From: Malacoraja senta
Lineage: Eukaryota
Assembly (NCBI GenBank): GCA_038087875.1
Contig: CM075989.1
Location: forward strand, 11,718,001-11,782,000
Direction: 5' to 3'
Length of the DNA stretch: 64,000 bases
How positions within the stretch are numbered: position 1 is the stretch's first letter; the number at the start of each line of letters is the position of its first letter. The notes beneath the pieces are model-generated. The model searched no databases and was not told the origin of the DNA. It saw only the letters and a program-made list of their open reading frames with translations. Positions 1,048 to 50,782 of the stretch are shown here, piece by piece. A program made the translations under genes and the position numbers.

Positions 1048-1295
1048 CGCTGTATCTCTAAACTAAACACATACTGAACACATGGACATAGACACAGACA
1101 TGCATAAGGACATACAGTCAAACAGAGACAGATACACAGGAGACAAGTTCACTCACGTACACAAATTGAAACAATGAGGGTCATTTCAACCAGTAATGTT
1201 TCATTAACATGAATCACTGCTCTCCATTGGGGCCACTCATGGTTAGCTTGTGATTCAGAGCACACTTGTGATAAGTATGTTGCCCTTGTTTCAGG

Positions 1296-6879: not shown

Positions 6880-7350
6880 CAGCGGAGAAATAGCCCTTTC
6901 CACCTACCACCTCTGTGCCGGCCCTCATGCCTATTTATACTAATCCAACTTGCCTGCACTAACTTTCTGCCTTGCTCATTGAAGTACCTGTCCAGATGCC
7001 TCTTAAATGTTGTTACTGTTCCTGCCTCTACTATCTGCTATGGCAGCTCGTTCCAGATACCAAGTATTCTTTGTATGAAAAATGTATCCTTCAGATCCCC
7101 TTAAAAACGCCTCCCTCTCGCCTTAAACCCTCTAATTATAGACACCCTTATCATGGGAAATAGGCACATCTATGCCTCTCATAATTTTATACACTGATAT
7201 CATGTCACCTCTCAGCCTCCTCTGCTCCAGGGAAAACACACCCAGCTCTTCCAATCTGTCCTGATAACTCAAGTCATCCAATCCAGGCAAACTCCTTGTG
7301 AATCTTTTGTGGTACTGCACACAGTATGGCTCAACCAGCATTGTGTACAA
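6880..7350 (-). mobile_element. CR1/HER1 LINE 3' fragment
   Basis: Minus-strand ORF 7132-7389 contains LSYQDRLEELGVFSLEQRRLRGDMISVYKIMRG, the typical CR1 ORF2 C-terminus. Confidence 0.75.
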
Positions 7351-10039: not shown

Positions 10040-10640
10040 TTAAGAACATAAGGAGTACTGGCTACATAATTTATTGACATTATGGGTGATCCACCTCAAC
10101 ACCATTTCCCATATCCGTTGACTCTCTCAAGGCCCAGCGATCTATTGATATCTGTTTTTGAATCATCTCAGTGATTGAGCCCCCACAGGTTGGAGAGTTC
10201 CAAAGATTCACTACTCTGGGTGAAGGAATTTCTTCTCCTTTCAGTCCTTAACAGCTGATTCCTTTATCTGAGACAGTGACCCCTGGTTCTAGACCCCTCA
10301 GCAAGGGGAAAATTCTTCCCTGCATTCATCCCGGTGAGCCTTGTAAGAATTTTGTAAGCTTCCCATTCTTCTGAACGCTATAGAATACTGTGGTCAACGC
10401 AATCTCTCCACACCGGCAAACCTGCCATCCCTCGATTCACCATTTCGGTGATTCTTTGCTGGACACTCTCTGTGACAAATGCAACCACTTTAAGGCAAGG
10501 AAACTAAAATGATACACAATGCTTGTAGGGTAGTCTCACTGGGGCCCAATGTAATTGCGGTAAGATATCTTCACTCAATTACTCAAATCCCCATGTAATT
10601 AAGCCTAACATAACATTTGCCTTCTTATCGCTTGCTCCAA
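10040..10640 (-). mobile_element. Degenerate CR1 LINE 3' fragment
   Basis: Reverse-complement CR1 motifs (ccaaagattcactactctgggtgaaggaatttcttctc; gtgaccccctggttctagac). Confidence 0.6.
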
Positions 10641-10871
10641 AGAAAGAACAACAGTGTCACATAAAAGGCACCCAACACTTACTCCTGAATCCAGTCTTCA
10701 TTCCATTCCCGCTGCCAATTGTCACAAATATACCATCAGTGTACTCGGAGAGGAAGAACAGTACTCATGGTTCAGCAGTTAATGGGTGCAACTCTGTGTC
10801 ACAAAGAATTGTATTTTTTCTTGCCATTTATTTATAAGAGACCATTGATAACATTAGAATTACATCACAAC

Positions 10872-11176
10872 AGCACGGTGGCACAGTGTTAGAGTTGCTG
10901 CCTTACAGCACCAAAGACCCGGATTCGATCCAGACTAGAGGGTGCTATCTGTACGGAGTTTACACGTTCTCCCCGTGACCTGCGTGGGTTTTCCCCGGGT
11001 GCTCCAGTCAAACACCAAATATGTACAGGGTTGTAGGTTAATTGGCTTTGGTAAAGATTGTAAATTGTCCCTTGTGTGTAGGATAGTGCTAGTGTACAGG
11101 GATCGCTGGTTTGCGCGGACTCGGTGAGACGAAGGGCCTGTTTCCACACTGTATGTCTAATCTAAACTAAGCTAAA
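10872..11176 (+). mobile_element. HE1-like V-SINE
   Basis: Full-length, colinear with other copies; (ctaaa)n tail. Confidence 0.85.
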
Positions 11177-13384
11177 TACAAGGTTCGCACAGGAAGTTAA
11201 AGAAGCCTCATTTTCTCATAGTAGAGAAGGGGATCTCACTCACTCAGAGGGTGGTTGTGACAAGGATATACTTTGGAGAGGTTGGATAAATAAGGGGAAT
11301 GTTGATTAAAAAAAAGGAAAAATGGATGTGGTGAGTCCACATGAAACTGGCTGGTGGGGCCGAACAGCTTGTGTGTGTGCTGTATGCCATGTGAATGTGT
11401 ACCTCGACTTTGCAATGATTGGTTTTCCTGTCTGATCCATGCTCTCCTAACCTTGTGCTAAACTTGACCTCCTTGCTCGGAGTGTGGCTGAACTCGACAC
11501 TCTGCCAGCGGTGTTTGCCCAAATACTTCAATGTGTTCAGTTCACTTGCAGTGGAGAAGGGATGCAGCCTGACAATTCATTAAGCCAACATGTGTCAATT
11601 AAAGACATTCAACTGGAAACTAGATTCGGGGACTTGCTGTCTCCTTAGGGGGACCTTTGAGTTGTGGAGATTCTCCGATTTTTAACTCATGGGCCTCACT
11701 GATCTCTCTGCCCCATCAGCGGTCATTGCTTTCAGCTGCCTGGGTCCCACGCCCTCCCTATCGTTCCGTCCTCGTCCTCAAAGCTTCTGTGTCCTCATTA
11801 ACCTCCTTAAGTGGCTCAGCAGTAAATTTTGTTTGGAAATCATTTGAGTTCCACTATTTTGGAGCTTTTACTTGAATGCAAGTTGTTGTTTGAATTCTGT
11901 CGTCCGATGGAGAACTGTCTGAAGAGGATGGAAGGATGTTCACCCTACTGATTCATTCATCTGATCCTGTCGGCCCCTCACTTTATTTGCCAACTCTAAA
12001 GTTTAGTTCAGTTCAGTTTAGTTGAGAGATAGAGCTAGACAATGGAAATAGACCCTTCAGCCCATCAAGTCCACACCGACCATCGATCGCCCATTCACAC
12101 TAGGTCTGTGTAATCACGTTTTCCCATCCATTCCCTGCACACTCGGGGCAAATTATAGAGGCCAATTAACCAACAAATAGTAAAGTGTATAGAAAGATGA
12201 GAGCTGATCTCACTGTAACCTTTAAGATTCAGAAGTTGAACAGCGTAGACGCTGGAAGAATGTTTCCCCTTGTGAGCCAAGTTAAAAAGAAGGAATCAGC
12301 TGATGAGGAGGGATTTCTTCCCTCAATGGGCTGCAAGCCCTCTACCACAGATACAATGGAGTATATTCAAAGCTCAGATGAATAGAGTTTTGGACAATGG
12401 ACTATTCACGGGTTGCAGGGAACAGGCTGGTTGAGTTCAGACCAATGATACATCATCCATGATCTTATCTAATAGTGAAATAGGTGCAAGGGGCCGAATG
12501 GTCTGCTCTGCTTCTCGTTCCAATGCTCTTAAGTAGATGCAAAAAATCTCATGGCAGAGGAGTACTAGAGATTTCCTGCTATACTCTTTGACAAGCTTCC
12601 TCACTATCCATCAATTATCATGTTGTCTGCAATTGAGCCGTGTTATGTTTACTAATCAGACTACCTACATTTTCATCCATATTATTTATATATGTCACGA
12701 ACAATAGGTCCCAGCACTGAATGTTGTGGGACATCGCTGGTCACAGACCTCCTCTTGGAGTAACACCCATCCACCCCTTCTATAATCAAATTAAAGCAAG
12801 TCAAGTAGTGTAGGAAGGCAAGAAGGGTCTTGACCCAAAACGTCACCCATTCTTTCTCTTTAGAGATGCTGCCTCTCCCGTTGAGTTACTCCAGCTTTTT
12901 GTGTCTATCTTCAAGTCAAGTGGAGTTTATTATCACTTGCACAAGTACGATGTGATACAACTACAATGAAAATCTTGTTTGCAGCAGCATCACAGGCACA
13001 TGCACGCAGACAAACACAGAAAAACATAAATTATACCTATCTTATACATAAAATTATGCAAGACAAGAAAGAGAAAGGGACAGTATTAAAAAAAAAAAGG
13101 CATTGGTGCAAAACACAATTAGAAAAAGAAACAAGTCCATGGTGGTGCAAGGAATGGTCCATAAGGTTCCATTGTCGAGATAGGATTAGGGTTCTGCAGG
13201 AAAATACATGTTTCTGAACCTGGTGGTGTGCAAAGGTTTCTGTGCCTCCAATTTTGGATCCTGTCTTCATCTCCAGGATCAGCCTACCACGATGAACCTT
13301 TACTGAAGTCCATTTAGACAACATCCACTACCCTACCCTCCTCTAATATGGTTGTCACTTCCTCAAAAAGCTCAAATGGGGCAG

Positions 13385-13692
13385 GCGCGGCGGCGCAGCG
13401 GTAGAGTTGCTGCCTTACAGCACCAGAGACCCGGGTTCGATCCTGAATACAGGTGCTGTCTGTATGGAGTTTGTACGTTCTCCCTGTGACTGCGTGGGTT
13501 TTCTCCGGCTCCTCCAGTTTCCTCCCACACTCCAAAGACGTACATATTTGTATGTTAATTTGGCTTTGGTAAAAATTGTAAATTGCCCCAGTGTGTAGGG
13601 TAGTGCTAGTGTATGGGGATCGCTGGTCAGCGCGGACTTGGTGGGCCGAAGGGCCTGTTTCCGCGCTTTATCTCTAAACTAAACTAAACTAA
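13385..13692 (+). mobile_element. HE1-like V-SINE
   Basis: ggcgcagcggtagagttgctgccttacagc...gggttcgatcc...(taaac)n tail. Confidence 0.88.
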
Positions 13693-13769
13693 ATCAAATT
13701 TGTGTGACATGATTTCCACCTCTCAAAGCCATGCTGACCTTGGCCTCAGAATGAAACTTCCTTTTAGAA

Positions 13770-14063
13770 ATAGTCATAGAGAAATACAGCACATAAACAG
13801 GCCCTTCAGCCCAACGAGTCAATGCCACCCATTCACACTATCCCACATTCTCATCAATTCTCCTCTAATTCTACCACTCACTGCACACGTGGGGCAATTT
13901 ACAGTGGTCAATTAACTGACCAGCCCGCCTGTCTTTGGGCTGTGGGATCCCGAGCACCCAAGGAAACCCATTCAGTCACAGGGAGAACGTGCAAACTCTG
14001 CGTAGAGAGCACCTAAGGTCAGGATTGAACTTGGGTCATTTGCACTATGAGGATGTGGCTCTA
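13770..14063 (-). mobile_element. Diverged V-SINE
   Basis: Reverse complement of the SINE body (cagggagaacgtgcaaactc; ggtcaggattgaac). Confidence 0.6.
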
Positions 14064-17000
14064 CTTCAGGCCGAGCTGCTGGGGCCGTTCTCCAGAGCTT
14101 GTTCAGTGTAATTTCTGCAAAACGTCACTCATCCTGGTGCAGCCATTAAATGCTTTTGAGGAGAAGCTGAACAAGTGACAATGTGTGGCAGGCAGGTGGT
14201 CATTAATCAGTAGCAGAAGGAAGCTCTGCTCCTTTATTGCAGGTTGAAGAACAGAGGCTGCTGACATCTCCTTTGGGATAATTCCTTTCCACAGAATCCA
14301 ACAGGGAGAGGCGCGTGTGTTATCCATATTTAGCGGTGTGGAGAGACCAGTGTGGTGATATTAGCCGGTGCTATAGTAACATGCGCCATCCCAAGTGAAA
14401 TCCCTCTGACACTTCAATCCAAAGGAGAGGTCATTACGGTGTGAGATGTGGGTATGTTTGCTCACAGTCCACTTGTTCCCCCCCAATAAGGTTGCCCGAC
14501 TGCCCTGCCTCAGATGTTACTCAATCCCCTCCGTCCATGCTTTACCTCCCACCCCCACGCTTCCGCCCTCCCCTTGCTCCACCCAACTCCATGAAAAAAC
14601 CCTTCCCAGGTTTGCCCCTCCCTCTCTTTCTTCACCTCCTGCAGATCTGTCCTCCACTTCTGCTGTCTTGATTTGCGATTCCCAACGTTCTTTGCTGTGG
14701 TGTCATGTCTTCAACTGCCACGACCCTGAGCTCTGGAAAGTAGGAGGAACATAGATAGGATGGATAGTGAGAAACCCTTCCCCATAACACAGACAGACAA
14801 AGGCTGAGGTGAGGAGTAAAGGGGCTAGAGGGGAACCAAGGAAAAGTACATTCATCTGGAGAATGGAATATGCTATCTGAGAAGGTGGAAGAAGTGACTT
14901 TCACAATAGCTTCAAAAGTATCTGGATGAGCACTTGAATGATTAAAAAGGCAAAGGCCATGGACCAAGTGCTGGTAAATAGGATCAGTATAGACAGATAG
15001 ATAGAATGGTCAGCATGAACCTGATGGGCCAAAGGGTCTATTTCTATGCTGAATGACTCTTTGATTCTGTGGTTCAACCTTGTATCCATACTTGCCTTGT
15101 GAACATATCTCAGTTTGGGCTAAACAAAAATTGTACATCAATTCACAAAAAGAGGTTAGAACAAGAGTTAAATTTTAAAGGGAGCATCTGGAAGAAGAGA
15201 GTGGTCTTGGGTTTAGGGAGGGAATTACCAGGTTCAGGGCTTGGGCAGTGGAGCGATGGAATTTGGGGAGGAACAAGAGGCCGGAGAAGGAAATGGAAAT
15301 TCCCGATGTGGAAAGCCATCAAATGTGGGCGAGGAAGGGAGGGAGGAGACAATCCTTTGTTTGAACTCTCCCCCACCCACCCCCATGAACTGCTGCATTC
15401 CGTCACTGTTCCCAGCCTGGAACTAAGCTGCCCCATTGTCCAGGACGTTTGAAAGATTGTTCCTAAGTTGTTCAGACATTTAGCAAGAGTATTGTCTAAT
15501 GTAGTCCAGCAGCTGCCAAAGTCGGTCTCACAAACAGGCTGGCAAACTGTCGGACAGCATTTGCCATGTGATTGAAGATCTCTACAATGCTCCCATTATT
15601 GTCATAAACTCACATCAAACCAACAAGCGGAATATCCCAAAATAAAGAGGCTTGACCTTGAACGCAGCAAATGTTTATCTCGACCATAGAAGGCAGTCTA
15701 ATCTAACAGCTCGATCTCTGGGCATTGTTGCCTCTGAAAGTTTCAAGGCCTCATCTCCAAACCCCTGGGCAGACTTTCCTCCAAGTCAGGTCGTGGTGTG
15801 GAGAGGCTGAGGGCATGACTGGAGAAGCTGCATCCTGGAAGCTTTGGGTACACGTGCTTGGCCATTCAGGACATCTACATGTGAATGATTGCATTGCTCC
15901 AGGCCAGAGGGTTCTGATGTTATGGAATAATAAGTGACGTGAGCGGTTGCAGGGATTGGATGGCAACATGCAGTAGGACAGAGGGGCTGAATGGTCTGCT
16001 CCTGCTCCTGTTGCTTTGTAGGCAGCAATGATTTGAACCAGTCTCCCTGATTCCATTATGTCATTTAGTGCCTCACTTGAGGTGGGATGAGTGGTGAAGG
16101 AGATCACAGCCGGGCACTTTGGCCCACATTCGGCACTTGAGATCCCACATCTTGCTCCAAGCTGAATGTTCTGCTGGGACTGGCTGTTCACTGAGATTGT
16201 AACAAAGCCATATCTTCTTTGATGTTGATCAAGGGGACACCATGTTCCCTCAGTAAGGGGTAGATCCTGGTGTGGGGCCGTGGAGATTGTGGGACCAGTT
16301 TCTCACCTCTGACGAGAGCTCTGGAGCTCCTGTCTCTCTCACTGGGCTGTCAGGAAGGGGGATTGAACCACTAAGCCTCCATCCACGTCTCGTGCTTGCC
16401 TGTATTACTGCTATACCATTGACTCAGATGTTCTTTGAGTAACAAGCCCTCCTCCCCCTGACAGGGTGTGATCCCGTTGGTTACCACAGCAAGCAGTCGC
16501 ATCTTGCTCTCCTAACCAGTTAGCACTCTGATGTTGACGTGGCCCATCCCAGTGGGAACCGGTCAGTGGACCTTGCTTCTGTCTGCCACATACTAACGAG
16601 AGGTTGCCATTGTTTGGTCTTTGGGTTTGGTCTCAGCAATTAGTTTAATTGGCTGGCAGTCTGGAAGTGTAGCTGGAAAATACAGGCAGTATCTCTGGAT
16701 GACAGCCAGCTGAGAGGCACACAGCCCCAGTGTCCGCACTGTGCTTGTATTGAGTCAGAACGCTGTCAATCCCCAGCCCCCGCACACATGCAGTCAATTG
16801 GCAGCACCAGGGCAGTGTTGCTTTGCCAGATACGCCATTCCCTGCCTTCTTCATGTTCAGCACAGACATTGTTGGCCGAAAGGAGAGAACGAATGGGCTT
16901 CTTCAGAAGGGTCTCATTCCTTCTCTCCAGAGATGCTGCCTGTCCCGCTGAGTTACGCCAGCATTTTGTGTCTATCTTCGATTTAAACCAGCATCTGCAG

Positions 17001-38495: not shown

Positions 38496-38695
38496 NNNNN
38501 NNNNNNNNNNNNNNNNNNNNNNNNNNNNNNNNNNNNNNNNNNNNNNNNNNNNNNNNNNNNNNNNNNNNNNNNNNNNNNNNNNNNNNNNNNNNNNNNNNNN
38601 NNNNNNNNNNNNNNNNNNNNNNNNNNNNNNNNNNNNNNNNNNNNNNNNNNNNNNNNNNNNNNNNNNNNNNNNNNNNNNNNNNNNNNNNNNNNNNN
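38496..38695. other. Assembly gap (200 N)
   Basis: Run of exactly 200 N; the round number suggests a placeholder of unknown size. Confidence 0.99.
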
Positions 38696-39266
38696 CTCGG
38701 CCCCTCGGCCCCGGCTCCCAGTGCCAAGCTTGCCGCCCAGAGGCTGTCAGACGCTCGGCTAATGTCCCCGAGGCTGAGAGGCTGCACCGCACCTGTCAGT
38801 GACACTCAGAGGCATCTATTTCAAAGCTTGTTCATAGGACATTTTAACAGCACATCAATTTGTCACTGGAAGGAGAGGAGGGCTAGCCAACAATAACAGC
38901 CCTGGCCTGTTGATGCACCCCCAGGGAGCTGCTCACACCCCGGGGGAGGGGGGGGGGGTCTCTGAGGGCCCAACTTCCTCACCGGCCAAACCAGCCATGG
39001 GAAACACACAGGGAGAGATTCGCACCCAGAGAGCGGAGACTTGGAACTGATCCACCAACTCACATCACATGTAATCCTACACTAGCAATAACGGTGTCTT
39101 TAATGCAACAACAATCCCTGGATGTTTCAAGGGAATGTTGGCCTGTGCAGGATCTCTGAGCTTGGGTGGGGGGGAGGGGGGTGTTCAGGAACAGAGCAGG
39201 GCAGCGGTGGAGAGGTAGGGAGGGGGCTGAATGGCAGCCTGGCCTCGGACGCAGGAAGAGACGTAA

Positions 39267-39570
39267 AGGGCCTGTCCCACGGGCATGCGACTCCATGCGG
39301 CCAGCGCGACCTAACCGCAAGCGGGTGCCGCGCGGAGGTCGCGGGGCCGGTCCCACTTCGATCGCGGGAGCCGCATGGAGTTGTGCGGAGCTGGTCCCGA
39401 CATCGCGCGGGGCTCCGAAAAACTGACACTGTTCAAAAATTCCGTGCGGCAAGGGCCGGCCGATTCGAGGCCGTGCGCACCGTCTTGACGGCACTCGACC
39501 TCCGCGCGGCCCCCGCTTGCGGTTAGGTCGCGCTTGCCGCATGGAGTCGCATGCCCGTGGGACAGGCCCT
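39267..39570. mobile_element. CpG-rich MITE with about 75-bp TIRs, probably PIF/Harbinger
   Basis: agggcctgtcccacgggcatgcgactccatgcgg... / ...ccgcatggagtcgcatgcccgtgggacaggccct; flanks TAA (39264-39266) and TTA (39571-39573). Terminal motif shared with 196-989. Confidence 0.75.
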
Positions 39571-39755
39571 TTACTCGTGCGTGGTCTCTCTGCCTCTGAA
39601 ACGGCTCCCGGCAAAAGAGGGGCAGGTGACCCTTGAGGTGAAGTGCCTCGAACACCCCCAACTACCCCGCAAAACCACCGCTCACGGGTGCAAGCGGGAA
39701 GCTGGGGTCACACACACCCTGATTGGGAAATATTGGGTCACAATTCTGGAACTGA

Positions 39756-40092
39756 GGTGTGTGCGCGTGTGTGTGAATGTATGTGTGTGTGTGTGTGTGT
39801 GCGCGCGCGCCTGTGTGTGTGTGTGCGTGTGTTCTCCAGGGAAGTACGCATGGCCATTATGTTAGGGGGTGGGTCTCTGTGTGTGTTGGGTGTGCGGGTG
39901 TGCGGGTGTGTTCTGTGGGATGGGTTATGTGTTTAGGTGTGGTTGGGTGGAAGCATGGCGTTGGGGTGATGGGGATGTGAGTGTGTGGTGTGCGTGTGTG
40001 TATTGGCGTCTGTGTTGTGTGTGCACTAGTGAGTTTGTGCGTTGGGTGTGGGTACTTTGTAAGTAGGTGTGTAATTGTGCTGTGTGTGTGTT
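39756..40092. repeat. GT-rich microsatellite / low-complexity tract
   Basis: (GT)n and degenerate variants. Confidence 0.85.
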
Positions 40093-40094
40093 TG

Positions 40095-40493
40095 CGGACG
40101 GGAAGAGCGGGCCGTGGGGACAGTCAGACCTCGCTGACCTTCCTTCCGCCCTGACCCAGGCACACTGAGCGGCCTCGGTGTAGCAACAGTTGTAGTGAGG
40201 CCTGGCCGCCGCTGTATGGAGGCCGGTTTGAGGCTGAAATCAGGACATCCAAATTGGGCTGAAACCCGATAGTGTGTACGGCAGAGACGAACTGCGCTCC
40301 GTATATAAACGGTGACTGCAGCAGGGGTATAAATAACTGCTCAGTAAATAACGCTGCTACTCGCGGCCCCGCATGTCTCCCGCAGCCGCTGAGCCCTTCA
40401 GTTCCACTCCCCTTGGTGGCTTCGGGCTGGCAAACCCTCCTCCGCCGGGACTGTTATTCTGCCAGAGAGAGTGTTCCGTGTCAGGGAGCGGTC
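40095..40493 (+). promoter_or_regulatory. Candidate internal FRMD5 promoter and 5' UTR (CpG-rich, two TATA-like boxes)
   Basis: TATATAAA at 40302-40309, TATAAATA at 40328-40335, ATTGG (reverse CCAAT) near 40254, high local CpG density, upstream of a strong-context ATG. Confidence 0.45.
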
Positions 40494-40701
40494 ATGGTGA
40501 AATGTCTGATCAAGATTAGAACCAAGGTCAACGTGCACCTGCGGATGATAAACCATTGCTGCCGAGATGTCAGGATCAGGATCCTCTCCCTGGGCCCACG
40601 GATCCTCAGCAAAGCGCTGGGCGCTCTGCCGCTCTTCCCCGCCCTCACCGCGGCCTCACCGCACGACGGGCCCTTTCCCGGGGCGTCCGGCGCCAGTACA
40701 G
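40494..40701 (+). CDS. FRMD5: Candidate alternative first coding exon of a short FERM-less FRMD5 isoform (MVKCLIKIRTKVNVHLRMINHCCRDVRIRILSLGPRILSK...GASGAST-G)
   Basis: gcggtcATGG Kozak; 208 nt ending ACAG|gtaaac (phase 1), matching the phase-1 acceptor of the last exon. The N-terminus resembles my recollection of an MVKC...MINHC-type short isoform of the paralog FRMD3. Confidence 0.65.
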
Positions 40702-41039
40702 GTAAACGCGGTTGCCGTCGCCCTGTGGAAGTTGCCGGGGGGAGGGGTTAGTTCAGGAGGTTGGGGATGAGAGGTCACAGAGGCCGTTCGGCCATCCTCC
40801 GTGCGACTGGCCCCGCTGGCCCTTTCTCACTCAAAGGCCAGGCTGTCAGACCAAGCGACCCTTGGGCACTGTTGACACGAGAGCGGGGGAGCTGTTCCCG
40901 GGGTTATAATCACAATACTGTTTCTGGAATCTTGCTGTGTACACATTAACAGAACGAATCCCACAAATTAGCACGTTTCTGGCTGGTGCAAGAAGCATTG
41001 TAGAAATGCACGGGGGAGGGGAGGGGTGCGTTATAAAGA

Positions 41040-41385
41040 GGGGCTGGAGTCCTTGGAAGATGGGAGGCTGAGGGATGACCTTCTAGAGATTTATACAAAT
41101 ACGGTACGGTGAATAGTCACAATCCTTTCCACAGGGCAGGCGAGTCTAAAACTAGAGGGCATAGATGTAATCCGAACCTGAGGGGGAACCTTTTCACACA
41201 GAGGGTAGTAGATTTGTGGAAGGTACAATTACAGATACAATTACAACGTTGAAGGACATTCAGGCAAGTACATGGGAGAGAAAGGTTTAGAGGGATATGG
41301 GCCAAACGCAGGAAAGTGGGACTAGCGTGGGTAGTAGGGTACCTGAAAAGCATGGAGGAGTTGGACCGAATGGCCGGCTTCCATA
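41040..41385 (+). mobile_element. CR1/HER1 LINE 3' fragment
   Basis: ggaggctgagggatgacc...gagtctaaaactagagggcataga...ttttcacacagagggtag. Confidence 0.7.
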
Positions 41386-43435
41386 AGGTTTAACTATAGC
41401 TCTTTTACTTTGTTCATGTGAAGTTCCCAAAATATCCCATCAAACATGAAGTATGGTCATCATTAAATACGAGGAGAATGTTTCTATTCTGTTCATTTAT
41501 GGATTGTGGGCGTCGCAGGCAGAGCTAGCGTTTCTCGCCCTTTAAAAGGCGGCGGTGAGCGGTGGTGGTGGTTTAACTGCAGTCCACGCGTGGACGATGC
41601 TCCTACACGTGCGGGGGAGTTTCAGGATTTAGATGAGGTGAGAGTGAAGGAACGGCGATATGTTTCCAAGTCAAGGTGATGTGTGTTCTTGGCGGGGAAC
41701 CTGCAGGTGGTGGTGTTCCCCTGGTCCCATCTTGTTGGCCGCGGTCATGGGTTGTGAAGTGCTGTCGGTGTGCCCTGGGCGAGTAACTATTGTGCTGATA
41801 ACTCACTCTGCAGCCAGGTGGGGGAGGGAATGAATGTTCAGGCTGGTCGAAGCGGTGCCGATCGATCGGACTGCTTTGTTTTGGATGGAGTTGAGCTTCT
41901 TGATACCATGCGGGGATTTGTACTCTATTATAGTGCTATATAAATGCTAATGTTCTTGCTGCAGCATCTGCAAGAAGAATCTGAAGATTATCGATGGGTT
42001 TGGTTAAGGGTGAGATTCTGGGACCTGAGAGACAGTGGGTGGGCCTCTGTTCGTCAGAAGCTGTAGGTGGGATCTCCAGAGAGCTGAACAACTGGGGTGC
42101 CCTTCCTCTTGGCACTGACCGGGCAAAGGGGGAACATTAAGGCAGGATCTTCAGTGGGCCGTATCACTCTATCCACACAAACCTACCACTCAGTTAATGA
42201 ATCTGCGGCACAGAGGGACAGTCTCCCCCTCAAACCTATGAAAGAGACAATGGATAATTAACCTACCACCTGCATGTCTCTTTTTTCATTAACAATGTGA
42301 TTTTATTCAATTAAACACAAATACAGAATAGTAAACAAAATAAAGACTGTCATTGGCAGTTTACAAACAACAATCACACTGTTATCAGATTTGAACGTTA
42401 CCTACCTTATCTACCGTACATTCGACCCTCCCCGCGGCGACCAGCGTTCACCCTCTATATCTTTGGGATGTGGAGGAAATTGGAGTACCCGGGGAACCAA
42501 TATGTTCACAGGGAAAACGTGCAAACTCCACACAGAAAGCGCACGAGCTCAGAATTTCCCTTCCAGTACTGTTTTTCTTCCTTCGGAAAGTTCCTGTTGA
42601 ATCTGCTCCGACCCCCCTTTCGGACAGTTTGTTCCCAATCACGACATTACGTAAATAACATTCTTTCCCACTGGCGGTCCGCTTGTCTATTGAATCCCTT
42701 TCCAGGCACCCCTGCCTAACAAAGCCACTGTATGGTCCATTAATCTCTACTCTGCAGGTACAACCCAGCTTCTCCGGTCTCTCCCATTGGGGTGTCCTGT
42801 TGTACCTCACAATCCCTCTCTCTCCGAGGCCTTTCCGTGGCACCTCCGTCTCTGGGACTAACTGCGACCGGTTACCATTAATATACCCTGTTGTGTCCTT
42901 TGAACTGGTTCTACCAAGGCTGCCACATATGGTCTTCACACCTCCCCCCTGTAACTGGCTGCCTGCGTCAGACATGCCCCACTCAGCTCTTGCGTAAGTG
43001 GTCATAAGATTGTGCCTGGTGGGATTTTGCCAGCCGTTAACATGAAACCTTCCGCTCATCATTGCCACAGGATTGGGTATTAAATGTTTTGGCTGTGACT
43101 GTGAATATAATGAATAGCAGCCGGGCTTGGGTGGGGAGAAGGGGTATGACTGGCCGGGGTGGGGACGGGACGGGACTGAAGTGATGGTAGAACTACAGTG
43201 GTGCGGGTGGTTACAATGAGACGAGGTTAGGTAGGCTGTGCAAGGGTGCGTGAGGTCACCGCAGTGCTCCTCACGTCACTCTTTCCCCCTCCTCCATGTC
43301 CCCGTCACCAATTCCAGATCCCTGTTACCCCTGTCTAGCACTGAAGATTCTGTCCAACTCCTATGTCTCCGTTGAAGTCTGTTTGTACTAATGAGCTAAA
43401 TTCCTTCAGTGTCCTGAAGATTAATAACATTGACA

Positions 43436-43907
43436 ATAGACAATAGGGGTGCAGGAGTAGGCCATTCGGCCCTTCGAGCCAGCACCGCCATTCAATGTGA
43501 TCATGGCTGATCATCCCCAATCAGTATCCCGTTCCTGCCTTCTCCCCATACCCACTGACTCCGCTGTTTTTAAGAGCCCTATCTAGCTCTCTCTTGAAAG
43601 CATCCAGAGAACCTGCCTCCACCGCCCTCTGAGGCAGATAATTCAACAGGCTCACCACTCTCTGTTCTTAAACTGTGGCCCTGGTTCTGGACTCCCGCAA
43701 CATCGGGAACATGTTTCCTGCCTCTAGCGTGTCCAAGCCCTTAACAATCTTATATGTTTCAATGAGATGCCCTCTCATCCTTCTAAACTCCAGAGTGTAC
43801 AAGCCCAGCTGCTCCATTCTCTCAGCATATGGCAGTCCCGCCATCCCGGGAATTAACCTTGTAAACCTACACTGCACTCCCTCAATAGCAAGAATGTCGT
43901 TCCTCAA
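43436..43907 (-). mobile_element. CR1/HER1 LINE 3' fragment (young)
   Basis: Minus-strand ORF DILAIEGVQCRFTRLIPGMAGLPYAERMEQLGLYTLEFRRMRGHLIETYKI plus the 3' UTR. Confidence 0.88.
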
Positions 43908-43949
43908 ATGAGTAAAGACAGACTCTGAGTGCTATCATCCCTATTGAAG

Positions 43950-44105
43950 AAGGTAGACAAAAATGCTGGAGAAACTCAGCGGGTGAGGCAGCATCTATGG
44001 AGCGAAGGAAATAGGCGACGTTTCGGGTCGAGATCCTTCTTTCACCCGCTGAGTTTCTCCAGCATTTTTGTCTACCTTCGATGTTCCAGCATCTGCAGTT
44101 CCTTC
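43950..44105. mobile_element. Penelope-derived palindromic repeat
   Basis: gaaggtagacaaaaatgctggagaaactcagcgggtga ... tcacccgctgagtttctccagcatttttgtctaccttc inverted arms. Confidence 0.7.
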
Positions 44106-44544
44106 TTCCCCATTGAACAATGTAACTCTTGCCCATCTTACCGAAAACATTTCCACAACCATCCAGTCTATAACCCACAGGCGTATCCACCGTGGGGAAG
44201 AGGATGTCACAAGGTTGTTGTCGCAGGTGGCCTTACACGTCTTTTCCTACCATCTTCCAGGGGCCCAGAGAGTCTATCCAGAGATGCCGTATTTACCATC
44301 TAGTTTACTGCATTCAGTGTCCATAATGTGGTCTCCGCTAAACTGGAGAGTCGTGGAGAACGCGCGCTCAGCCAGCAGGAATCACCCTGAGTTTACCGTT
44401 GCCCTCCGCTCTAACTGATTGATTGAATGATAGAGCATGGAAACAGGCCCTTCGGCCCACCGAGTCCATGCCGACCCCCACCCCATTCTCACTGATCCCC
44501 CTGTCTGTGGCCTCAATAAAAACAACAAGCACTTGTCCCTGAAT

Positions 44545-44707
44545 GTCCCAAAGACGTACTGGTATGTAGGTAAATTGGCTTGGTAGATGTAAAAAATGTC
44601 CCTAGTGTGTGTAGGATGGTGTTAATGTGCGGGGATCGCTGGTCGGCGCAGACTCGGTGGGCCGATGGGTCTGTTCCGCGGTGTATCTCTAAACTAAACT
44701 AAACTAA
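44545..44707 (+). mobile_element. HE1-like V-SINE 3' half
   Basis: taatgtgcggggatcgctggtcggcgc...tgtatctc(taaac)n. Confidence 0.8.
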
Positions 44708-45813
44708 TTCAACGGGTCAGACAGCATCTCTGGATGGCATGGATGGGTAGGCGACGTTTCCGGTCGAGACCCTTCTTCAGACTGGGATGGACCTGGTTGC
44801 CATGGACACGGGGTTCTACTGTAACCTTGACTGGGGTGGGGGGGGGGGGGAACAGTTCTGCGAAGTTTAACGGACGGAATGGATTTATGGAAGCATGAAG
44901 GGAAGGTGCTGGGAGTCAGGACACAAGCAACATAGTTCTGGGTTTACAGAGAGGCTCTCGTTCAGGGGTCGGTGGAAGAGACGATATTTTAGGCGTCGCA
45001 TTCGCCACTGGTTTTTGTAGATCAGGCGACAGTCCCGTTCTCCTGAGGGAGATCACTTTCTATTTTTTGACCCTGCATCATTCTCTCTATCTCTCTCTCC
45101 CCCCCCACCCCCCCTCAATGTCCCTGTCGCTCTAGTGAGCGCTCTGCTTACACCCTGCCCACCTCACCGACACCACCCAAATTACCGCCCCTACACAAGA
45201 CTGCAAAGAAAAGGCCTCTGTGTTTCCACTGCCGCCTCTCTGTCAGGTTAACGAGCTCAGCAGTGGATTACGAGACCAGGAGGGGACGGTTCGGTACCTT
45301 GTGCCGGTTCAGTGCATTAGAGACTGCTCTCCAGATTACATCCTTCATCTCTCTGCCAATCACTTAACAAATTAAACCATCGGACTCAGCTTGATTTGAA
45401 GAGGAGATTCCAGAACTATGGTGGAGCGGCTGCTGTCCGTGTGGAGTTTGCACGTTCTCCTTGTGACCATGTAGAAACGAGGTGCTGGTTTACACGAAAG
45501 GGCACAGAGTGCTGGAGTAACTCAGCGGATCAGGCAGCATCCCTGCAGAACACGATGTGTGATTCCTGTGACCATGGTGGTTCCCCCGATTACTCCAGTT
45601 CCTCCCACATCATAGGGACGTGCGTGTTTGTTGATTAATTGACCGCTGTAAATTCTGTTGTCAGTGGTAGAATCTGGGGGAAGTCGATGGGAATGTAGAG
45701 AAAATAAAACGAGGCTGGTGTACACGGCTGCATGATGGTCGGCATGGACTCATTGTGCCAAATGACCCGTTCCTGCACTGCGCTGGAAACAGAGTAGCGT
45801 CGCGGTGAAGTAA

Positions 45814-45985
45814 NNNNNNNNNNNNNNNNNNNNNNNNNNNNNNNNNNNNNNNNNNNNNNNNNNNNNNNNNNNNNNNNNNNNNNNNNNNNNNNNNNNNNNN
45901 NNNNNNNNNNNNNNNNNNNNNNNNNNNNNNNNNNNNNNNNNNNNNNNNNNNNNNNNNNNNNNNNNNNNNNNNNNNNNNNNNNNNN
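45814..45985. other. Assembly gap (172 N)
   Basis: Run of N. Confidence 0.99.
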
Positions 45986-47138
45986 GACTTGAGAACGAAG
46001 GATTGCATTTTAGACCGTTTAAGAGCAGGGTGGTGTTGTCAGGTGAAGGGGATGTGCTGGGAGTCAGGACACAGACAACATAGTTCTGGGTAGCCTCGAG
46101 TTTGCAGAGAGTGAAATGGGGTGAACCAGACAATAAACCAAATCGCAGTGATCTTAGCTGATACCTCTTCACTTCTGTAAACTTGGACTTTATCTTTATT
46201 GATTGTAGTTTTAGTGAACTCACTCACAGATGTCCGTATCTTCTGCAAGCATTGTTCAGGAGAGGCCATTGAATCTAGTTTTCTTTCCCTTTGTGGGTAA
46301 ATTGGGATCAATTGAATTAGTGTCAGTCCACCAAGACCAAGCTTTGACACAACTTCCCTTCCAGTGACTTAGAGTGAGACCATTCTTGCAACTGGCTGCA
46401 AATTATCGGTTTAACAACACAGCAAAGGTCTACCGAGTTTATTTGGGCACCAATTTCGGCGATTGGAACTCGCAGCCAAATTTATAACTGAGTCTCCCGA
46501 CAGAAACAGACTCATGTCTTCGGTAAATTGGAGGAGAGTTACAGAACAGTGCGGGTAACATTGCCTCCAACCCGGCGCAGGCGAGACTGGCAGATACAAA
46601 CGCACAGTGGGGTGTGTGGTCACAATGTGCCGCCTTTAAACAGCAACGTTCAGAGATTCAGAGAAGATGGGGCTACTCCACAGTGACAGCTGTTTTAAGG
46701 GAAAGTTGTTGATGGTCCAATGTTGGAGAAGGAACTAATTTCAAATCCAAAAGGATTGGACTGGGATCCTGCTCACGGCCCCAGTCTTAGGGTTCTGACA
46801 TTTTGACAATAGGTTTCTGACATTTTGACAATACATGATTAAATGACCTTTTCTTTACACGCATTATTGTTTATCTCTACTGTCCAGGGACAGCAAGTCA
46901 ACGGTAATTAATGATTAAACTGCTCCGTCTCAGCCCGCTTGGATAGAGGAAATTTCTTAGGATTTGAATTATTCATCAAATACTCTTGATCCTAACGTCG
47001 CAGTCTGATTTCCTTGTGGATCATCAGGCGGTGATCAGGTGCGGGCCGCTGTCATCTGACCCACACGACGCGGATGTCCACATTAGTAAACTGCTACAGC
47101 GCCTGAGATCAGGGGTCTGGGTGGCTCAAGGATCTGAT

Positions 47139-47322
47139 TTGTGTGTGTGTGTGTGCGTGTGCGTGTGCGTGCGTGTGCGGGTGCGGGGGTGTTTGCGGGT
47201 GTGGATGTAAGGGTGTGGATGTAAGGGTGTGGGTGTAAGGGTGTGTGTGTGTGTGGGTGTGTGTACGGGTGTGGGTGTGTGCGGGTGTGGGTGTACGGGG
47301 GTGTGTGCGGATGTGTGTGTGT
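47139..47322. repeat. GT-rich microsatellite with an internal (gtgtggatgtaagg) repeat
   Basis: Direct inspection. Confidence 0.85.
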
Positions 47323-49019
47323 GGCGCATGATGCAGCGTTTAAGCTCGTCCAATTTTTGGCGCATATCCCTCTAAACCTTTTCTATCTATTTGCCGACCC
47401 AAATACCCTTTAAATATTGTTCTAATACCTGCCTCAACTACTTCCTCTGGCAGCTAATTCCTTATACCTATGCGTAAAACCTGCCCCTTTTAAGTTCCTA
47501 TTAAATCTTTCCCCTCTCACCTTAAACCTTTGTCCTCTGGATCTTCATTCTCTTACCTTGGGGAATGAACTCTACATTGACCCTGTCTATCCCCCTCATG
47601 ATTTTATACACCTCTTTCACACCCTCACTCAGCATCCTGAGCTCCGGACCTGCCCAAACTCTGCCCATGTCATGCCATCGAGTCATGGAATATCCTCATA
47701 AATTCTGCACTCCTTCCAGCTTAATGGCACTTTTTTTCCTGCAGCACCTTCCTTTCCCCAAGTCTGCAGTGGGATTTGAATTCTCCATGGATTATTGTTG
47801 CTGACTCAGCCTGCGTGTTCACTTTACTACATGTGCCAAGTTTGATGTTATAAAGTTGTGAGGTACCAGTTTCTACAAACTGCCTTGGCAACTTGTCCCT
47901 AAAACAACCCGAACCTTCCCAAAAACCAACGAGGCAGACAAATAGACAAATAGCTCAACAGCACCAAGACAAAGCAGAGCGATGGCACCCGTCCACTGGC
48001 GCAGTGGTTGCGGTGAGCGCCGGCCGACCACAGCGCAGTTACCCGCATGGCAGCATTGTCCGGCCCTCCGTCACTCTGGCGGAAGGCAGTAGCGCAGGCG
48101 ACCACCAACCACTGCAGCCCCCCCACCCCCCATCCCATGTTCCTCGCTGTCCTGCCTGCCAACTTCCCGGGTACCTCGTGGAATTTCGTCCCTAGCGGTT
48201 CAGTGGGTAGTTCAGGATGGATAATACGCGCTGACCCCGCCAGCACAGTGTACACGCTGGGAAGGAATAAAGTAATCTATTTTCATGAATCCCACCTCCG
48301 CCAGGACAATCACAAACAAGGCTGCCTGCTCTACAACTCCAGCCTGAATGCTGACAGTGCAAAGACTTTATTAGCGCAGAGTCTGTGCTGATGCAGAACG
48401 CGCAGCGGCGCCTCACATCAGAACCGTAAACTCGGTCTAACTACAGGCTGAGATTAAGCAAGTGTAGCCGTGAGTGATTTGTGAGTTTTCCCCCCAGATG
48501 GAGAGCGACGGGATTTCGATCCGAGTCTCAGCCCAACACACATTGGGAGAAGAGAGCAGGCACCTCTCCATCAGTGCAAGGTCGGGATCAAATGGAAACA
48601 CATTGATCTCTGAACCGCGGGGACTGTGCCAGAGAGCTGGCGCTCTCTCTGAGCTCTGCTCACTCGTCTAAATCTCTCCCTGATCCTGACCAGCTGCTGC
48701 CACTCCATCTGCCGCCCTCTCCCCTCCACTCGACATCTGTGGCCTTGTGGATGTTGGAGCGAACCCACACTCCGCCGAGCCCTGGCACGGAGCTTCACCT
48801 TGAGCCAGGCTCAGCTGTGAGAGAGTTGGCGGGGGAGGTGGATTGCGGAGCTTGGTGAATGAGGAAAGCCACGAGTTGGAAGATGCTGAAGTTCACGTCG
48901 GAGGAGAGGAAGTTTTTAGTGATTTCTAGCGAAGACCATTCCAGATGTAGACCGTACACTTCATCAGTCGGTTCTAAACAGCTCAGACACTCCCTCTGCA
49001 GAGCTCACTGCAAACTACA

Positions 49020-49320
49020 CCACTGATACCAGCGCGCACTCACTGCCACACTCTCTCACTCACACGCACTCTCACTATCATAGATCTTCACACACATACA
49101 CTCAGATCCACTCTCTGTCACACACGCCTTCACACACACATACACACAGTCACTGCCACAAACGCTCTCACACACCCAGTCACATTCACACATTGAGATA
49201 TATTTGCAGTCACAGATTAAGTCATACACATTTACGCACATACATTCACACTTACCCTCACACACATACTTCATACAGAGATATATATGTGCACAGATAC
49301 ACTGTATTTGTATACAAAAT
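49020..49320. repeat. CA-rich low-complexity tract
   Basis: Degenerate (CA)n. Confidence 0.75.
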
Positions 49321-49629
49321 ATGTGCATCCCATTACTCAAAGCTCAGAACAGCCAGTGTTTTATTGATTGGGAGCAGTCTCTCATTTTTATTCTGGTCAA
49401 TTTTCAGAACTGGCAAGAGTTCAACAGAGACGGGCAGAGTGTCACAGCAGCCCCCCGCCCCCGTCCCATCCACACTCCCTGTCCAGTGGAGGACCCCTGG
49501 GCCAATTGACCGCTCCTAGTAACCCCTCGCATCCTGGCAGTCACTGACCTCCGGTCTGGGTAAAAACACCGGTATTTACCATCGCCCCCCCCCCCCTCCA
49601 TCGCTGAGGTAATTTGTCTTTTGACACTA

Positions 49630-50070
49630 AATATCAACTAACTACCTCCATAAGGCTTCCTAAGCCGCCTAAGGAAGTGGAGGTCTTGGTGTACTTTCTT
49701 GGCCATAGCTCTCACGTGGCTGGTCCGGGACAAATTGCTGTCGATATTTATTCCGAAGAACTTGACGCTTTTGACTATCTATACTTCAGCACCATAAATA
49801 TGCACCGTTTCGCTTCCTGAAGTCAATCGCTGACATCGAGGGAGAGGTTGTTATCTTGGTACCAGGTGAGGAGGTTCTCAATCTCCTTTTGTGCTCAGTC
49901 TGGTCATTATTTGATACCCGGCCCACTACGGTGGTGCCCTCTGTAAACTCCTAAATTGATTTGGATTGGTTTTGGCTGCACAGTCATGAATGTTTAAGAA
50001 GTATAAATTGGGGAGAGAGAACGCATCCTTGCGGGCACCAGTGTTGCGGATTACGTAGAGCTGAATGGCA
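49630..50070 (-). mobile_element. Rex1/Babar-like LINE RT remnant
   Basis: Similar to 20323-21480 (gaagtcaatc...gagggagaggttgttatcttgg; cccactacggtggtg). Confidence 0.6.
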
Positions 50071-50213
50071 TCATCTGTGTTTGATGCTGGGCCCTGGGTT
50101 GGACAAGCACCTTGGTCCGGGCTACTTGTTTCCATAGAGGCTCCATGTTTATGGTTTGTTGCGCGGGCGTTCTCTCGGGTTTTCCGTTCAATGTGTCAGT
50201 TTCTCTGTTCTAG

Positions 50214-50782
50214 GTTTGGAATCACTCCGGGATAGCGCCCACTCCACGCCGGTGCGATCCAGCTCTCACACAGACTCCTTCATGATCCACTCGGGCAAGG
50301 CTTTGGCCGCCGAGGGCAACGAGCGGACGTCGGTGATAGCGGACGAGATGTACAGCCCGGCCGCCAGTGTCCTGCCCACGCCGGTGTCGGAGCCCGGCCA
50401 GGAATCCATCCATCTTCAGCAAGACTACAGCTCCAGCGGCATCGAGGAGAGGGGGAGCGAGGTGGGAACGTCGGCAGCGGCAGAGGAACCGGCCAGAGGG
50501 GCTGGCACCTCGCCCGAAGGTGTTAGTGAGAGGGCGGAGCAGGAACAGGTGAATACATTTGTTTTAAGTGTGGCCCGTTTGCTACTGGTGACCGTCGGAC
50601 TGCTCTTTGCATTGCTCCTCCTCCTGATCGCTCTTGCGGAATCAGATATTGACGTAGCATTTTTACGTGATATACGCCAGACGCCTGAGTTTGAACAGTT
50701 CCATTATGAATACTTTTGTCCCCTCAGGCGATGGTTTGCCTGCAAGGCGCGGTACCTGCTAAGCCTTCTCATTGACACATGA
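50214..50782 (+). CDS. FRMD5: FRMD5 terminal coding exon ([16 protein letters not shown]...transmembrane helix...[26 protein letters not shown]...LLIDT*)
   Basis: ttctctgttctag|GTTTGGAA, phase 1; stop TGA at 50780-50782. C-terminus matches recalled FRMD5 (LLIDT end) rather than FRMD3. Confidence 0.95.

What the first reader, a model, noticed from the sequence alone, without database searches (positions are those of the whole stretch)
40494..50782. Hidden two-exon, FERM-less FRMD5 isoform from an internal promoter
Seen: strong Kozak ATG at 40494 downstream of two TATA boxes in CpG-rich non-repeat DNA; 69 codons plus G ending at CAG|gtaaac; an in-frame join to the terminal exon gives ...[14 protein letters not shown]..., a 258-aa protein. 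The first ~43 residues are basic/hydrophobic with three Cys and only one acidic residue, and the C-terminus holds the transmembrane helix and the conserved [11 protein letters not shown] tail. Recalled, unverified: the paralog FRMD3 has a short isoform beginning with a similar MVKC...MINHC peptide. Inference: an ancient short membrane isoform predating the FRMD3/FRMD5 duplication, with an amphipathic, palmitoylation or organelle-targeting leader replacing the FERM domain. Alternative: a phase-2 acceptor (ttctgccag, 40465) could make it an internal exon.
Basis: partly seen in the sequence, partly recalled or inferred. Interest (0 to 1): 0.8.

Follow-up and report, generated by a model that had tools for sequence, protein, structure and literature searches.

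The report
Conserved FERM-less FRMD5 short isoform
The window holds a real alternative first exon that, joined to the last FRMD5 exon, encodes a 258-residue membrane protein without the FERM domain; it is conserved from lampreys to humans and already listed in protein databases, but I found no paper that studies it.

Summary
The gap at 45814-45985 lies inside the intron and does not touch the reading frame.

RNA contigs from close relatives cover only about 40386-40703. They run straight through the proposed 40465 acceptor, stop at the donor, and continue for 334-337 nt of sequence unlike the genome.

- Orthologous proteins of 249-280 aa that start with the same leader are already in databases for human, mouse, zebrafish (isoform X4), birds, Polypterus and sturgeon.
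- FRMD3 has the same short form in platypus, axolotl and blue tit.
- Lamprey has the same nested two-exon layout.
- Mouse transcript contigs carry the complete short reading frame behind their own 5' end.

The 37-residue leader is the best-conserved part: 32/37 identical between this shark and lamprey, against 29/77 for the membrane helix plus tail. It is basic, has a strand-like alternating pattern, and is modelled as extended rather than helical. Its function is unknown, and I found no paper on it.

A minor rival is that the exon is also included as an in-frame 300-nt cassette through an acceptor at 40401|40402.

Verdict: a real, conserved, already annotated isoform of moderate interest.

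The parts
40302..40335 (+). Pair of TATA-like boxes (TATATAAA at 40302-40309, TATAAATA at 40328-40335), the presumed core promoter of the short isoform
   Evidence: Sequence. Only 4 plus-strand matches to TATAWAWA occur in the 64 kb, and 2 of them are here. RNA contigs begin 50-85 nt downstream. The transcription start itself was not mapped.
40386..40493 (+). 5' untranslated part of the leader exon, as far as RNA contigs reach. The true start probably lies near 40355-40385.
   Evidence: Contig ends fall at 40386 (X1), 40402 (X2), 40442 (X3) and 40480 (X4). All contigs follow the genome, with only small insertions in the AG-rich run at 40463-40472. The upstream in-frame translation is not conserved.
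40494..40701 (+). Coding part of the leader exon: Met1 to Thr69 plus the first base of Gly70. The donor is CAG|gtaaac at 40701|40702.
   Evidence: tblastn of duck and Polypterus short isoforms gives E 1e-23 and 5e-26. phmmer finds 73 hits. RNA depth stops at 40703. All three coding differences in organism B (40550, 40562, 40565) are synonymous third-position changes (read).
40702..50213 (+). Intron of 9512 nt, containing the assembly gap at 45814-45985
   Evidence: There is no RNA depth at 40717-41120.
50214..50782 (+). Terminal FRMD5 exon, shared with the long isoform: Gly70 (last two bases) to Thr258, then TGA
   Evidence: It is 75% identical to Scyliorhinus FRMD5-like and about 60% to bony-vertebrate FRMD5. 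The same RNA runs hold it.
50558..50638 (+). Transmembrane helix, Phe185 to Ala211 ([27 protein letters not shown])
   Evidence: Kyte-Doolittle 19-residue maximum of 3.16 at residues 192-210. In the Polypterus orthologue AlphaFold2 gives a helix with pLDDT 85-96.
50639..50779 (+). Conserved 47-residue tail after the membrane helix ([36 protein letters not shown]...)
   Evidence: Nearly invariant columns in alignment A1. It is predicted as helical. It contains the Tyr that corresponds to human Tyr546.
40401..40402 (+). Possible alternative acceptor (cccttcag|TTCC). It would turn 40402-40701 into an in-frame 300-nt cassette exon of the long isoform.
   Evidence: The phase fits the canonical phase-1 exons. 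The X2 contig ends exactly here, but the X1 contig runs through it. Fur seal and Apodemus gene models include the exon internally.

Best explanation
Positions 40494-40701 are the coding part of an alternative first exon of FRMD5. The exon lies in the gene's last intron and has its own TATA-containing, CpG-rich promoter.

It is spliced from 40701 to the shared terminal exon at 50214. The result is a 258-residue protein made of four parts:
- a 37-52 residue basic leader in an extended conformation;
- a disordered Ser/Pro/Glu-rich linker;
- one transmembrane helix;
- the conserved 47-residue tail.

The FERM domain and the FERM-adjacent region are absent. The FERM-adjacent region is cited as the ROCK1-binding part of FRMD5, so that site is absent too.

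Shown here: the exon, the frame, the donor use, the orthology and the age.

Inferred: the exact transcription start, the direct 40701-50214 join in this species, and what the leader does.

My best guess for the leader is a cytosolic strand that docks onto a partner's sheet or onto an acidic membrane face, possibly helped by acylation of Cys4 or Cys22/23. On that reading the leader takes the place of the FERM domain as the N-terminal module of a membrane-anchored protein.
For: Sequence and frame.

Orthologues:
- 45 fetched proteins have the leader at residue 1 together with the tail. 165 have the leader at residue 1.
- Named entries include human, mouse, zebrafish isoform X4, chimpanzee and orang-utan 'isoform 12', duck and Polypterus.
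- Conservation starts exactly at the Met. 29 proteins have upstream extensions that are unrelated outside mammals, and the shark upstream frame matches none of them (best E 6.1).

RNA from close relatives:
- Depth is confined to about 40386-40703, with zero depth on both sides.
- Contigs X2 (640 nt) and X3 (603 nt) align up to 40703. The two bases after the donor are GT in both the intron and the terminal exon.
- They then continue for 334 and 337 nt of sequence unlike the genome.
- Counted from 50216, those lengths end at 50549 and 50552. That is at an internal donor (50548|50549) which other species use for alternative tails.
- The same runs hold the terminal exon.

Own 5' end: six mouse transcript contigs carry the full short reading frame, with staggered 5' ends, an in-frame stop upstream and no FERM exons.

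Age:
- FRMD3 short forms, a hagfish protein and a lamprey protein exist.
- In lamprey locus L002 the leader exon lies 3.4 kb upstream of the terminal exon and downstream of a FERM_C exon.

Leader:
- Identity over residues 1-37 is 32/37 to lamprey and 33/37 to Polypterus.
- The hydrophobic moment at 170 degrees is about 1.0 over residues 2-18.
- AlphaFold2 gives pLDDT 81-85 for residues 1-30 with no helix.

No Pfam family was found, FERM included.
Against: - No read or contig was shown to span 40701-50214 directly. The overhanging letters were not listed.
- The RNA runs come from close relatives. Only X4, whose organism is not stated, matched without any difference.
- Logan contigs give no transcription start, and the contig ends at 40386 and 40402 both follow an AG.
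- The segment carrying the leader exon sits between two assembly gaps. Its placement rests on strand, order and the layout in other species.
- The function of the leader is inference only.
- Translation of the short form was not shown in any species.
Confidence: 0.85

Rival explanations
1. The exon is, also or instead, an in-frame cassette of the long FERM isoform. An acceptor at 40401|40402 would give a 300-nt exon (40402-40701). That exon fits the phase-1 junctions on both sides and would insert 100 residues between ...HISIME and GLESLRD.
For: - The phase and an open frame were computed.
- The X2 contig ends exactly at 40402, and its other end appears to lie at another alternative splice site. 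This suggests that contig ends mark branch points.
- RefSeq models in fur seal (626-688 aa) and a 703-aa Apodemus model include the leader exon internally after ...HISIME.
Against: - The X1 contig, from the same organism, follows the genome through 40402 to 40386.
- The peptide upstream of the Met is not conserved, whereas a coding cassette should be conserved from its acceptor onwards.
- In mouse an in-frame stop lies upstream of the ATG, and the transcripts have their own 5' ends.
- The pyrimidine tract is weak (0.65).
- An open stretch of 31 codons is unremarkable by chance.
Confidence: 0.2
2. The exon is internal through the reader's phase-2 acceptor at 40465.
For: Only the motif ttctgccag at 40457-40465.
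Against: - Three contigs (X1, X2, X3) follow the genome across 40465.
- A phase-2 acceptor does not fit the canonical phase-1 upstream exon, which ends ...HISIME plus one base of the Gly codon.
Confidence: 0.03
3. The reading frame is a chance or non-coding feature, or the segment between the two gaps is misplaced, so no such protein is made from this locus.
For: The exon sits on a segment bounded by gaps at 38496-38695 and 45814-45985. No direct junction read was seen.
Against: - 54 homologues have E <= 1e-10.
- The leader is 86% identical to lamprey.
- The coding differences seen are all synonymous.
- The exon is transcribed and bounded by splice sites.
- Strand and order match the lamprey locus.
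Confidence: 0.02

Closest known systems
Annotated FRMD5 short isoforms: human A0A1B0GV18 (249 aa), mouse A0A1D5RLQ6 (256 aa), zebrafish XP_021323491 isoform X4 (274 aa), duck A0A493SVD3 (256 aa)
   Same: - The leader is at residue 1.
- The junction G|LESLRDSAH is the same.
- The linker, membrane helix and [11 protein letters not shown] tail are the same.
- No FERM domain is present.
   Different: - The shark leader is the fish/bird type (MVKC...NHCC), while mammals have MGKS...NHCL (21/37 identical).
- The variable stretch between the leader and the junction differs in length.
- These entries are automatic annotations, and I found no paper on them.
FRMD3 short isoform: platypus XP_039766814 isoform X2 (241 aa), axolotl XP_069481983, blue tit A0A8C0UPW2
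   Same: - The leader is homologous (MVKCLVKIQTRRSLHLQMVNYC..., 18/37 identical).
- The build of leader, linker, membrane helix and [17 protein letters not shown] tail is the same.
   Different: It is a paralogous gene. The middle region is unrelated apart from the SASLLPTPV motif.
Canonical FRMD5 (570 aa in human, NM_032892.5)
   Same: The whole terminal exon is shared. In human this is residues 379-570, which include Tyr546.
   Different: The long form has FERM and FERM-adjacent regions where the short form has the leader. Those regions carry the reported integrin beta5, p120-catenin, STAT3 and ROCK1 contacts and most of the disease variants (PMC8268710, PMC13086079, PMC11839232).
Lamprey LOC144931049 isoform X3 (XP_078711071, 378 aa) and hagfish A0A8C4NH95 (230 aa)
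   Same: - The leader is 32/37 and 27/37 identical.
- A membrane helix and a FHY...CP.RRW.AC tail are present.
- In lamprey the two exons are nested in a FERM gene.
   Different: - The lamprey leader exon is longer (about 150 codons).
- The tail is much more diverged (29/77 and 22/77).
- The overlapping lamprey FERM gene model ends 40 nt into the terminal exon, so it may not share the tail.

Membership tests
FRMD5/FRMD3 short (FERM-less) isoform | Leader M-[VG]-K-[CS]-L-[IV]-x-I-x-T...L...N-[HY]-C...R.L..G-[PS]-R at the very N-terminus | tested here: met
   M1, K3, L5, I8, T10, L16, N20 and C22 are invariant in the 58 sequences of alignment A2.
FRMD5/FRMD3 short (FERM-less) isoform | Leader exon ends in phase 1 and joins the terminal exon at G|LESLRDSAH | tested here: met
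   The frame and splice motifs fit. The orthologues have the same junction.
FRMD5/FRMD3 short (FERM-less) isoform | RNA that joins the two exons in this species | tested here: inconclusive
   Relatives' contigs stop at the donor and go on for 334-337 nt. Those lengths fit the first part of the terminal exon. The overhanging letters were not shown, and the runs are not from the window's own sample.
FRMD5/FRMD3 short (FERM-less) isoform | Own transcription start, with no FERM exons in the mRNA | tested here: inconclusive
   Contigs begin at 40386-40480, downstream of the TATA pair, and there is no depth upstream. This is shown clearly only in mouse.
FRMD5/FRMD3 short (FERM-less) isoform | Transmembrane helix followed by the [11 protein letters not shown]...CPLRRW tail, and no FERM domain | tested here: met
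KASH-domain proteins (PF10541) | Match to the KASH profile, and a luminal tail that ends in PPPX | tested here: not met
   There is only a feature-based resemblance of 0.79, below the 0.9 at which the tool counts a hit as more than a lead. Pfam gives no hit at E <= 1. The tail ends in LLIDT.
Mitochondrial-type amphipathic helical presequence | N-terminal amphipathic helix with loose sequence conservation | tested here: not met
   Residues 2-18 show strand periodicity: moment about 1.0 at 170 degrees against 0.1-0.4 at 100 degrees. AlphaFold2 gives no helix in residues 1-30. The leader is 86% identical between shark and lamprey. No dedicated targeting predictor was available.
Tail-anchored membrane proteins | A single membrane helix within about 30 residues of the C-terminus | tested here: not met
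   47 residues follow the helix.

The most novel reading that the evidence does not exclude
The leader-plus-tail protein may be a FERM-independent membrane protein in its own right, more than 500 million years old.

Its 37-residue leader is more conserved than the tail it shares with the long form (32/37 against 29/77 between shark and lamprey). On this reading the leader is a specific docking strand, possibly lipid-anchored through its cysteines, with a partner and role separate from those of the FERM domain.

Variants in the terminal exon, such as human p.Tyr546Cys, would then act at least partly through this unstudied product.
Probability: 0.3. Interest if true: 0.6.

Novelty: already known. 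Interest (0 to 1): 0.35.

Why it matters
Work on FRMD5 and FRMD3, and the reading of disease variants in FRMD5, assumes the FERM-containing protein. The papers I could search do not mention a short form.

The locus also makes a second product from its own promoter. That product lacks every mapped interaction region but keeps the membrane helix and the conserved tail. Its leader has barely changed between lamprey and shark.

Knock-outs, antibodies or variants that touch the terminal exon affect both proteins. One example is p.Tyr546Cys, which falls on the invariant FHY tyrosine at residue 225 of the human short form.

For the genome scan, this is a true positive that is already annotated elsewhere, not a new kind of element.

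Tried and rejected
- The Scyliorhinus locus could not be read; no DNA was served.
- The closest Logan protein (P0001, 96% identical) sits on an unspliced contig, so it says nothing about the junction.
- A word-based search with the 69-aa peptide found no shark transcript product; all hits were 61-80% identical.
- The look-up for the Denticeps paralogue failed.
- tblastn found no canonical FRMD5 exon upstream in the window. The penultimate exon is therefore more than 40 kb away or in a gap.
- Pfam gave no family.
- The PDB sequence search gave only an E 8.7 chance hit.
- Rfam found nothing at 38700-42000.
- The ESM Atlas lead to KASH was not backed by any profile.
- The leader has no similarity to the FERM part of the long form.
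- One phmmer hit, P0184, is a tandem-repeat artefact.
- The bacterial-type promoter scan is irrelevant for a vertebrate.
- N-myristoylation of the mammalian MGKS start was considered and set aside. Lys at position 3 and Ile at position 6 do not fit the usual rule as I recall it; this was not tested.
- Lu et al. 2022 is not held, so Tyr546Cys is cited from the table in PMC11839232.
- I did not run a fold search, because most of the model is disordered or a single helix.
Full report
**What is in the sequence**

- An ATG at 40494 (G at -3, G at +4) opens 69 codons. They are followed by a G at 40701 and the donor CAG|gtaaac.
- The terminal FRMD5 exon begins after ...ttctag at 50214 and ends with TGA at 50780-50782.
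- The split codon G+GT reads Gly. The join gives ...[14 protein letters not shown] and a protein of 258 residues.
- Two TATA-like boxes lie at 40302-40309 and 40328-40335. The 64-kb window has only four plus-strand matches to TATAWAWA, and these are two of them.
- The 600 nt around the exon have GC 0.60 and CpG observed/expected 0.80. Most of the window is at 0.25-0.45.

**The gaps**

The window has two runs of N, at 38496-38695 and 45814-45985. The second lies inside the 9512-nt intron between the two exons, so whatever is missing there cannot change the reading frame. I did not try to fill either gap.

The exon-bearing segment 38696-45813 does sit between the two gaps. Its placement therefore rests on three things: it is on the right strand, it lies upstream of the terminal exon, and the lamprey locus has the same order.

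**Is it transcribed and spliced?**

I laid Logan contigs of four RNA runs on 39000-42000.
- Apart from two repeat families, depth is confined to about 40386-40703. It is zero from 39606 to 40312 and from 40717 to 41120.
- The contigs cover 40386-40680 (X1), 40402-40703 (X2), 40442-40703 (X3) and 40480-40652 (X4).
- X2 and X3 align up to 40703. The two bases beyond the donor are GT both in the intron and at the start of the terminal exon.
- X2 and X3 then continue for 334 and 337 nt that do not match the genome downstream.
- Counted from 50216, these lengths end at 50549 and 50552. The sequence there is AACAG|GTGAAT (50548|50549), which other species use as an internal donor to make alternative C-termini.
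- Two contigs from two organisms that break at the same alternative splice site are hard to explain unless the overhang is the first part of the terminal exon.
- The same runs hold that part of the exon.

This is good indirect support for the 40701-50214 join, but it is not a direct junction read. The loose-end letters at 40703 were not among those listed. The RNA runs also come from close relatives rather than from the window's own sample; the near-complete holders, X8 and X9, are of unstated library type.

Within the coding part, all three differences seen in organism B (40550, 40562, 40565) are synonymous third-position changes: ATA to ATC, TGC to TGT and CGA to CGT. Organism A differs only in the 5' untranslated part (read).

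**Orthologues**

A search with the terminal exon returned many proteins of 249-280 residues named 'FERM domain containing 5'.
- Their N-termini are MVKCL[IV]KIKTKVNVHLRMINHC... in duck, passerines, stickleback, Polypterus, sturgeon and zebrafish.
- In mammals they are MGKSLIKIHTRV...NHCL....
- In every case the leader joins at G|LESLRDSAH.
- Cluster look-ups put names on them: human A0A1B0GV18 (249 aa), mouse A0A1D5RLQ6 (256 aa), 'FRMD5 isoform 12' in chimpanzee and orang-utan, and zebrafish XP_021323491 isoform X4.
- The ESM Atlas holds a cluster of 493 members with a 253-aa representative named 'FERM domain containing 5'.

So the isoform is not hidden in general. Whether it is annotated in this particular genome I cannot tell.

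**Where conservation starts**

An exhaustive phmmer search with the 69-residue peptide gave 73 hits, 54 of them with E <= 1e-10. In 47 of the 73 the match starts at residue 1 or 2 of the protein.

Among all fetched proteins, 165 have the leader at residue 1. Another 29 have an extension of at least 20 residues. Those extensions are unrelated to one another outside mammals, and the shark's upstream in-frame translation matches none of them (best E 6.1). Conservation therefore begins at the Met, as expected for a start codon and not for the inside of a coding exon.

**Own promoter**

Six mouse Logan contigs from six runs carry the complete 256-residue reading frame 165-200 nt from their 5' ends. 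They have an in-frame TAA upstream and no sequence encoding ...HISIME or any FERM exon.

In the window, no canonical FRMD5 exon is detectable upstream. The leader exon is thus deep in the last canonical intron.

**Age**

- Platypus XP_039766814 'FRMD3 isoform X2' (241 aa), axolotl XP_069481983 and a blue tit entry begin MVKCLVKIQTRRSLHLQMVNYC.... They end with a membrane helix and [17 protein letters not shown].
- A hagfish protein (A0A8C4NH95) and a lamprey protein (XP_078711071) have the same build.
- In lamprey locus L002 the leader exon (from 10001) lies 3.4 kb upstream of the tail exon (13835-14533). It lies downstream of a FERM_C-coding exon (5639-5731) on the same strand, inside a gene model with FERM_N, FERM_M and FERM_C.

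The nested layout therefore predates the split between lampreys and jawed vertebrates, and so also the FRMD3/FRMD5 duplication.

**What the protein looks like**

| Compared with the window | Leader (residues 1-37) | Membrane helix + tail |
|---|---|---|
| Polypterus | 33/37 | 66/77 |
| Lamprey | 32/37 | 29/77 |
| Hagfish | 27/37 | 22/77 |
| Mouse, human | 21/37 | 64/77, 63/77 |

(All values.) The leader is the best-conserved part across the deepest split.

- The leader has 10 K/R against 1 D/E. Hydrophobic and basic residues alternate strictly from Val2 to Cys22. The hydrophobic moment at 170 degrees is about 1.0, against 0.1-0.4 at 100 degrees.
- AlphaFold2 on the whole Polypterus orthologue (40 sequences) gives the leader pLDDT 73-77, a disordered middle, a membrane helix and two tail helices at pLDDT 85-96.
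- On the leader alone (58 sequences) it gives pLDDT 81-85 for residues 1-30, with no helix and no internal sheet. Only a short helix appears at residues 35-41.
- An extended, confidently placed strand without a partner suggests a segment that pairs with something else.
- Pfam, the PDB and Rfam give nothing.

The flanks of the membrane helix (an Arg on the N-side, Glu and Asp on the C-side) and the cytosolic FERM domain of the long form both argue for one topology. The N-terminus would be in the cytosol and the 47-residue tail, with its two conserved cysteines, on the other side of the membrane. This is inference.

**How it most likely works**

The short form keeps the membrane anchor and the tail. 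It lacks the FERM and FERM-adjacent regions. The literature places the integrin beta5, p120-catenin, STAT3 and ROCK1 contacts and most disease variants in those regions (PMC8268710, PMC13086079, PMC11839232).

It cannot be a simple smaller copy of FRMD5. It is either an independent membrane protein or a competitor for whatever binds the tail.

My best guess is that the leader is a cytosolic docking strand for a partner or for an acidic membrane face, perhaps acylated on Cys4 or Cys22/23. I hold this with low confidence. A helical targeting presequence is disfavoured by the strand periodicity, the models and the very high sequence conservation.

**The internal-exon alternative**

A different one deserves mention.
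- An AG at 40400-40401 would start an exon at 40402. The exon 40402-40701 is 300 nt long, is open, and fits the phase-1 junctions on both sides.
- The X2 contig ends exactly there.
- RefSeq models in fur seal (626-688 aa) and a 703-aa Apodemus model place the leader exon inside the long isoform after ...HISIME.
- Against it: X1, from the same organism, runs through 40402; the upstream peptide is not conserved; and mouse has a stop there.

I give about 0.2 to occasional cassette use alongside the first-exon form.

**Literature**

Four full-text searches found no paper that describes a FERM-less FRMD5 or FRMD3 isoform. The FRMD5 papers I opened do not mention isoforms.

One reported de novo variant, p.Tyr546Cys (table in PMC11839232), falls on the invariant Tyr of the FHY motif. 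This is residue 225 of the human short form. The numbering is consistent with the variants at residues 349-355 and 375 mapping onto SRSCPSI and HISIME.

**Verdict**

What remains open is the function of the leader and of the short protein. Interest is moderate.

Noticed in passing
window 50548-50775: An internal intron sits inside the terminal exon, with donor AACAG|GTGAAT at 50548|50549 and acceptor cccctcag|GCG at 50727|50728. Removing these 179 nt deletes the membrane helix and shifts the frame to [15 protein letters not shown]. That matches the mammalian alternative tail AMVCLQNPLSGEPAH (E 0.009), seen in fur seal isoform X7 and in a 194-aa bat short form (P0246). The RNA contigs X2 and X3 seem to end at this donor.
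   Followed up: partly
window 39200-39600 and 41120-41420: Two repeat families have very high depth and many loose ends in the RNA contigs of all four runs, up to about 21,700 word depth at 41222-41322. They are probably SINE-like elements. Rfam has no match.
   Followed up: partly
window 39757-39832: A (GT)38 microsatellite lies about 500 nt upstream of the TATA pair.
   Followed up: no
window 40373-40519: An upstream ATG at 40373 opens a 48-codon frame that overlaps the main start in another frame. It lies upstream of every RNA contig end, so it may be outside the transcript.
   Followed up: partly
window 40463-40472: The AG-rich run in the 5' untranslated part carries a different 4-nt insertion in each of three related RNA contigs, while the coding part shows only synonymous changes.
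   Followed up: no
L002 (lamprey) 1-13875: The overlapping 547-aa FERM gene model ends only 40 nt into the tail exon. In lamprey the long form may therefore not share the membrane helix and tail with the short form.
   Followed up: no
P0124 (Acipenser ruthenus, 124 aa): This sturgeon gene model joins the leader exon to exons of the FERM F2 lobe (...[22 protein letters not shown]...). It may be a model error, a duplication or a back-splice.
   Followed up: no
P0165/P0193 (Denticeps), P0164 (Tachysurus): Teleosts carry an extra paralogue of the short form. In Denticeps it is annotated as 'uncharacterized protein' with only short isoforms, so it may be a stand-alone FERM-less gene. The locus could not be fetched.
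   Followed up: partly
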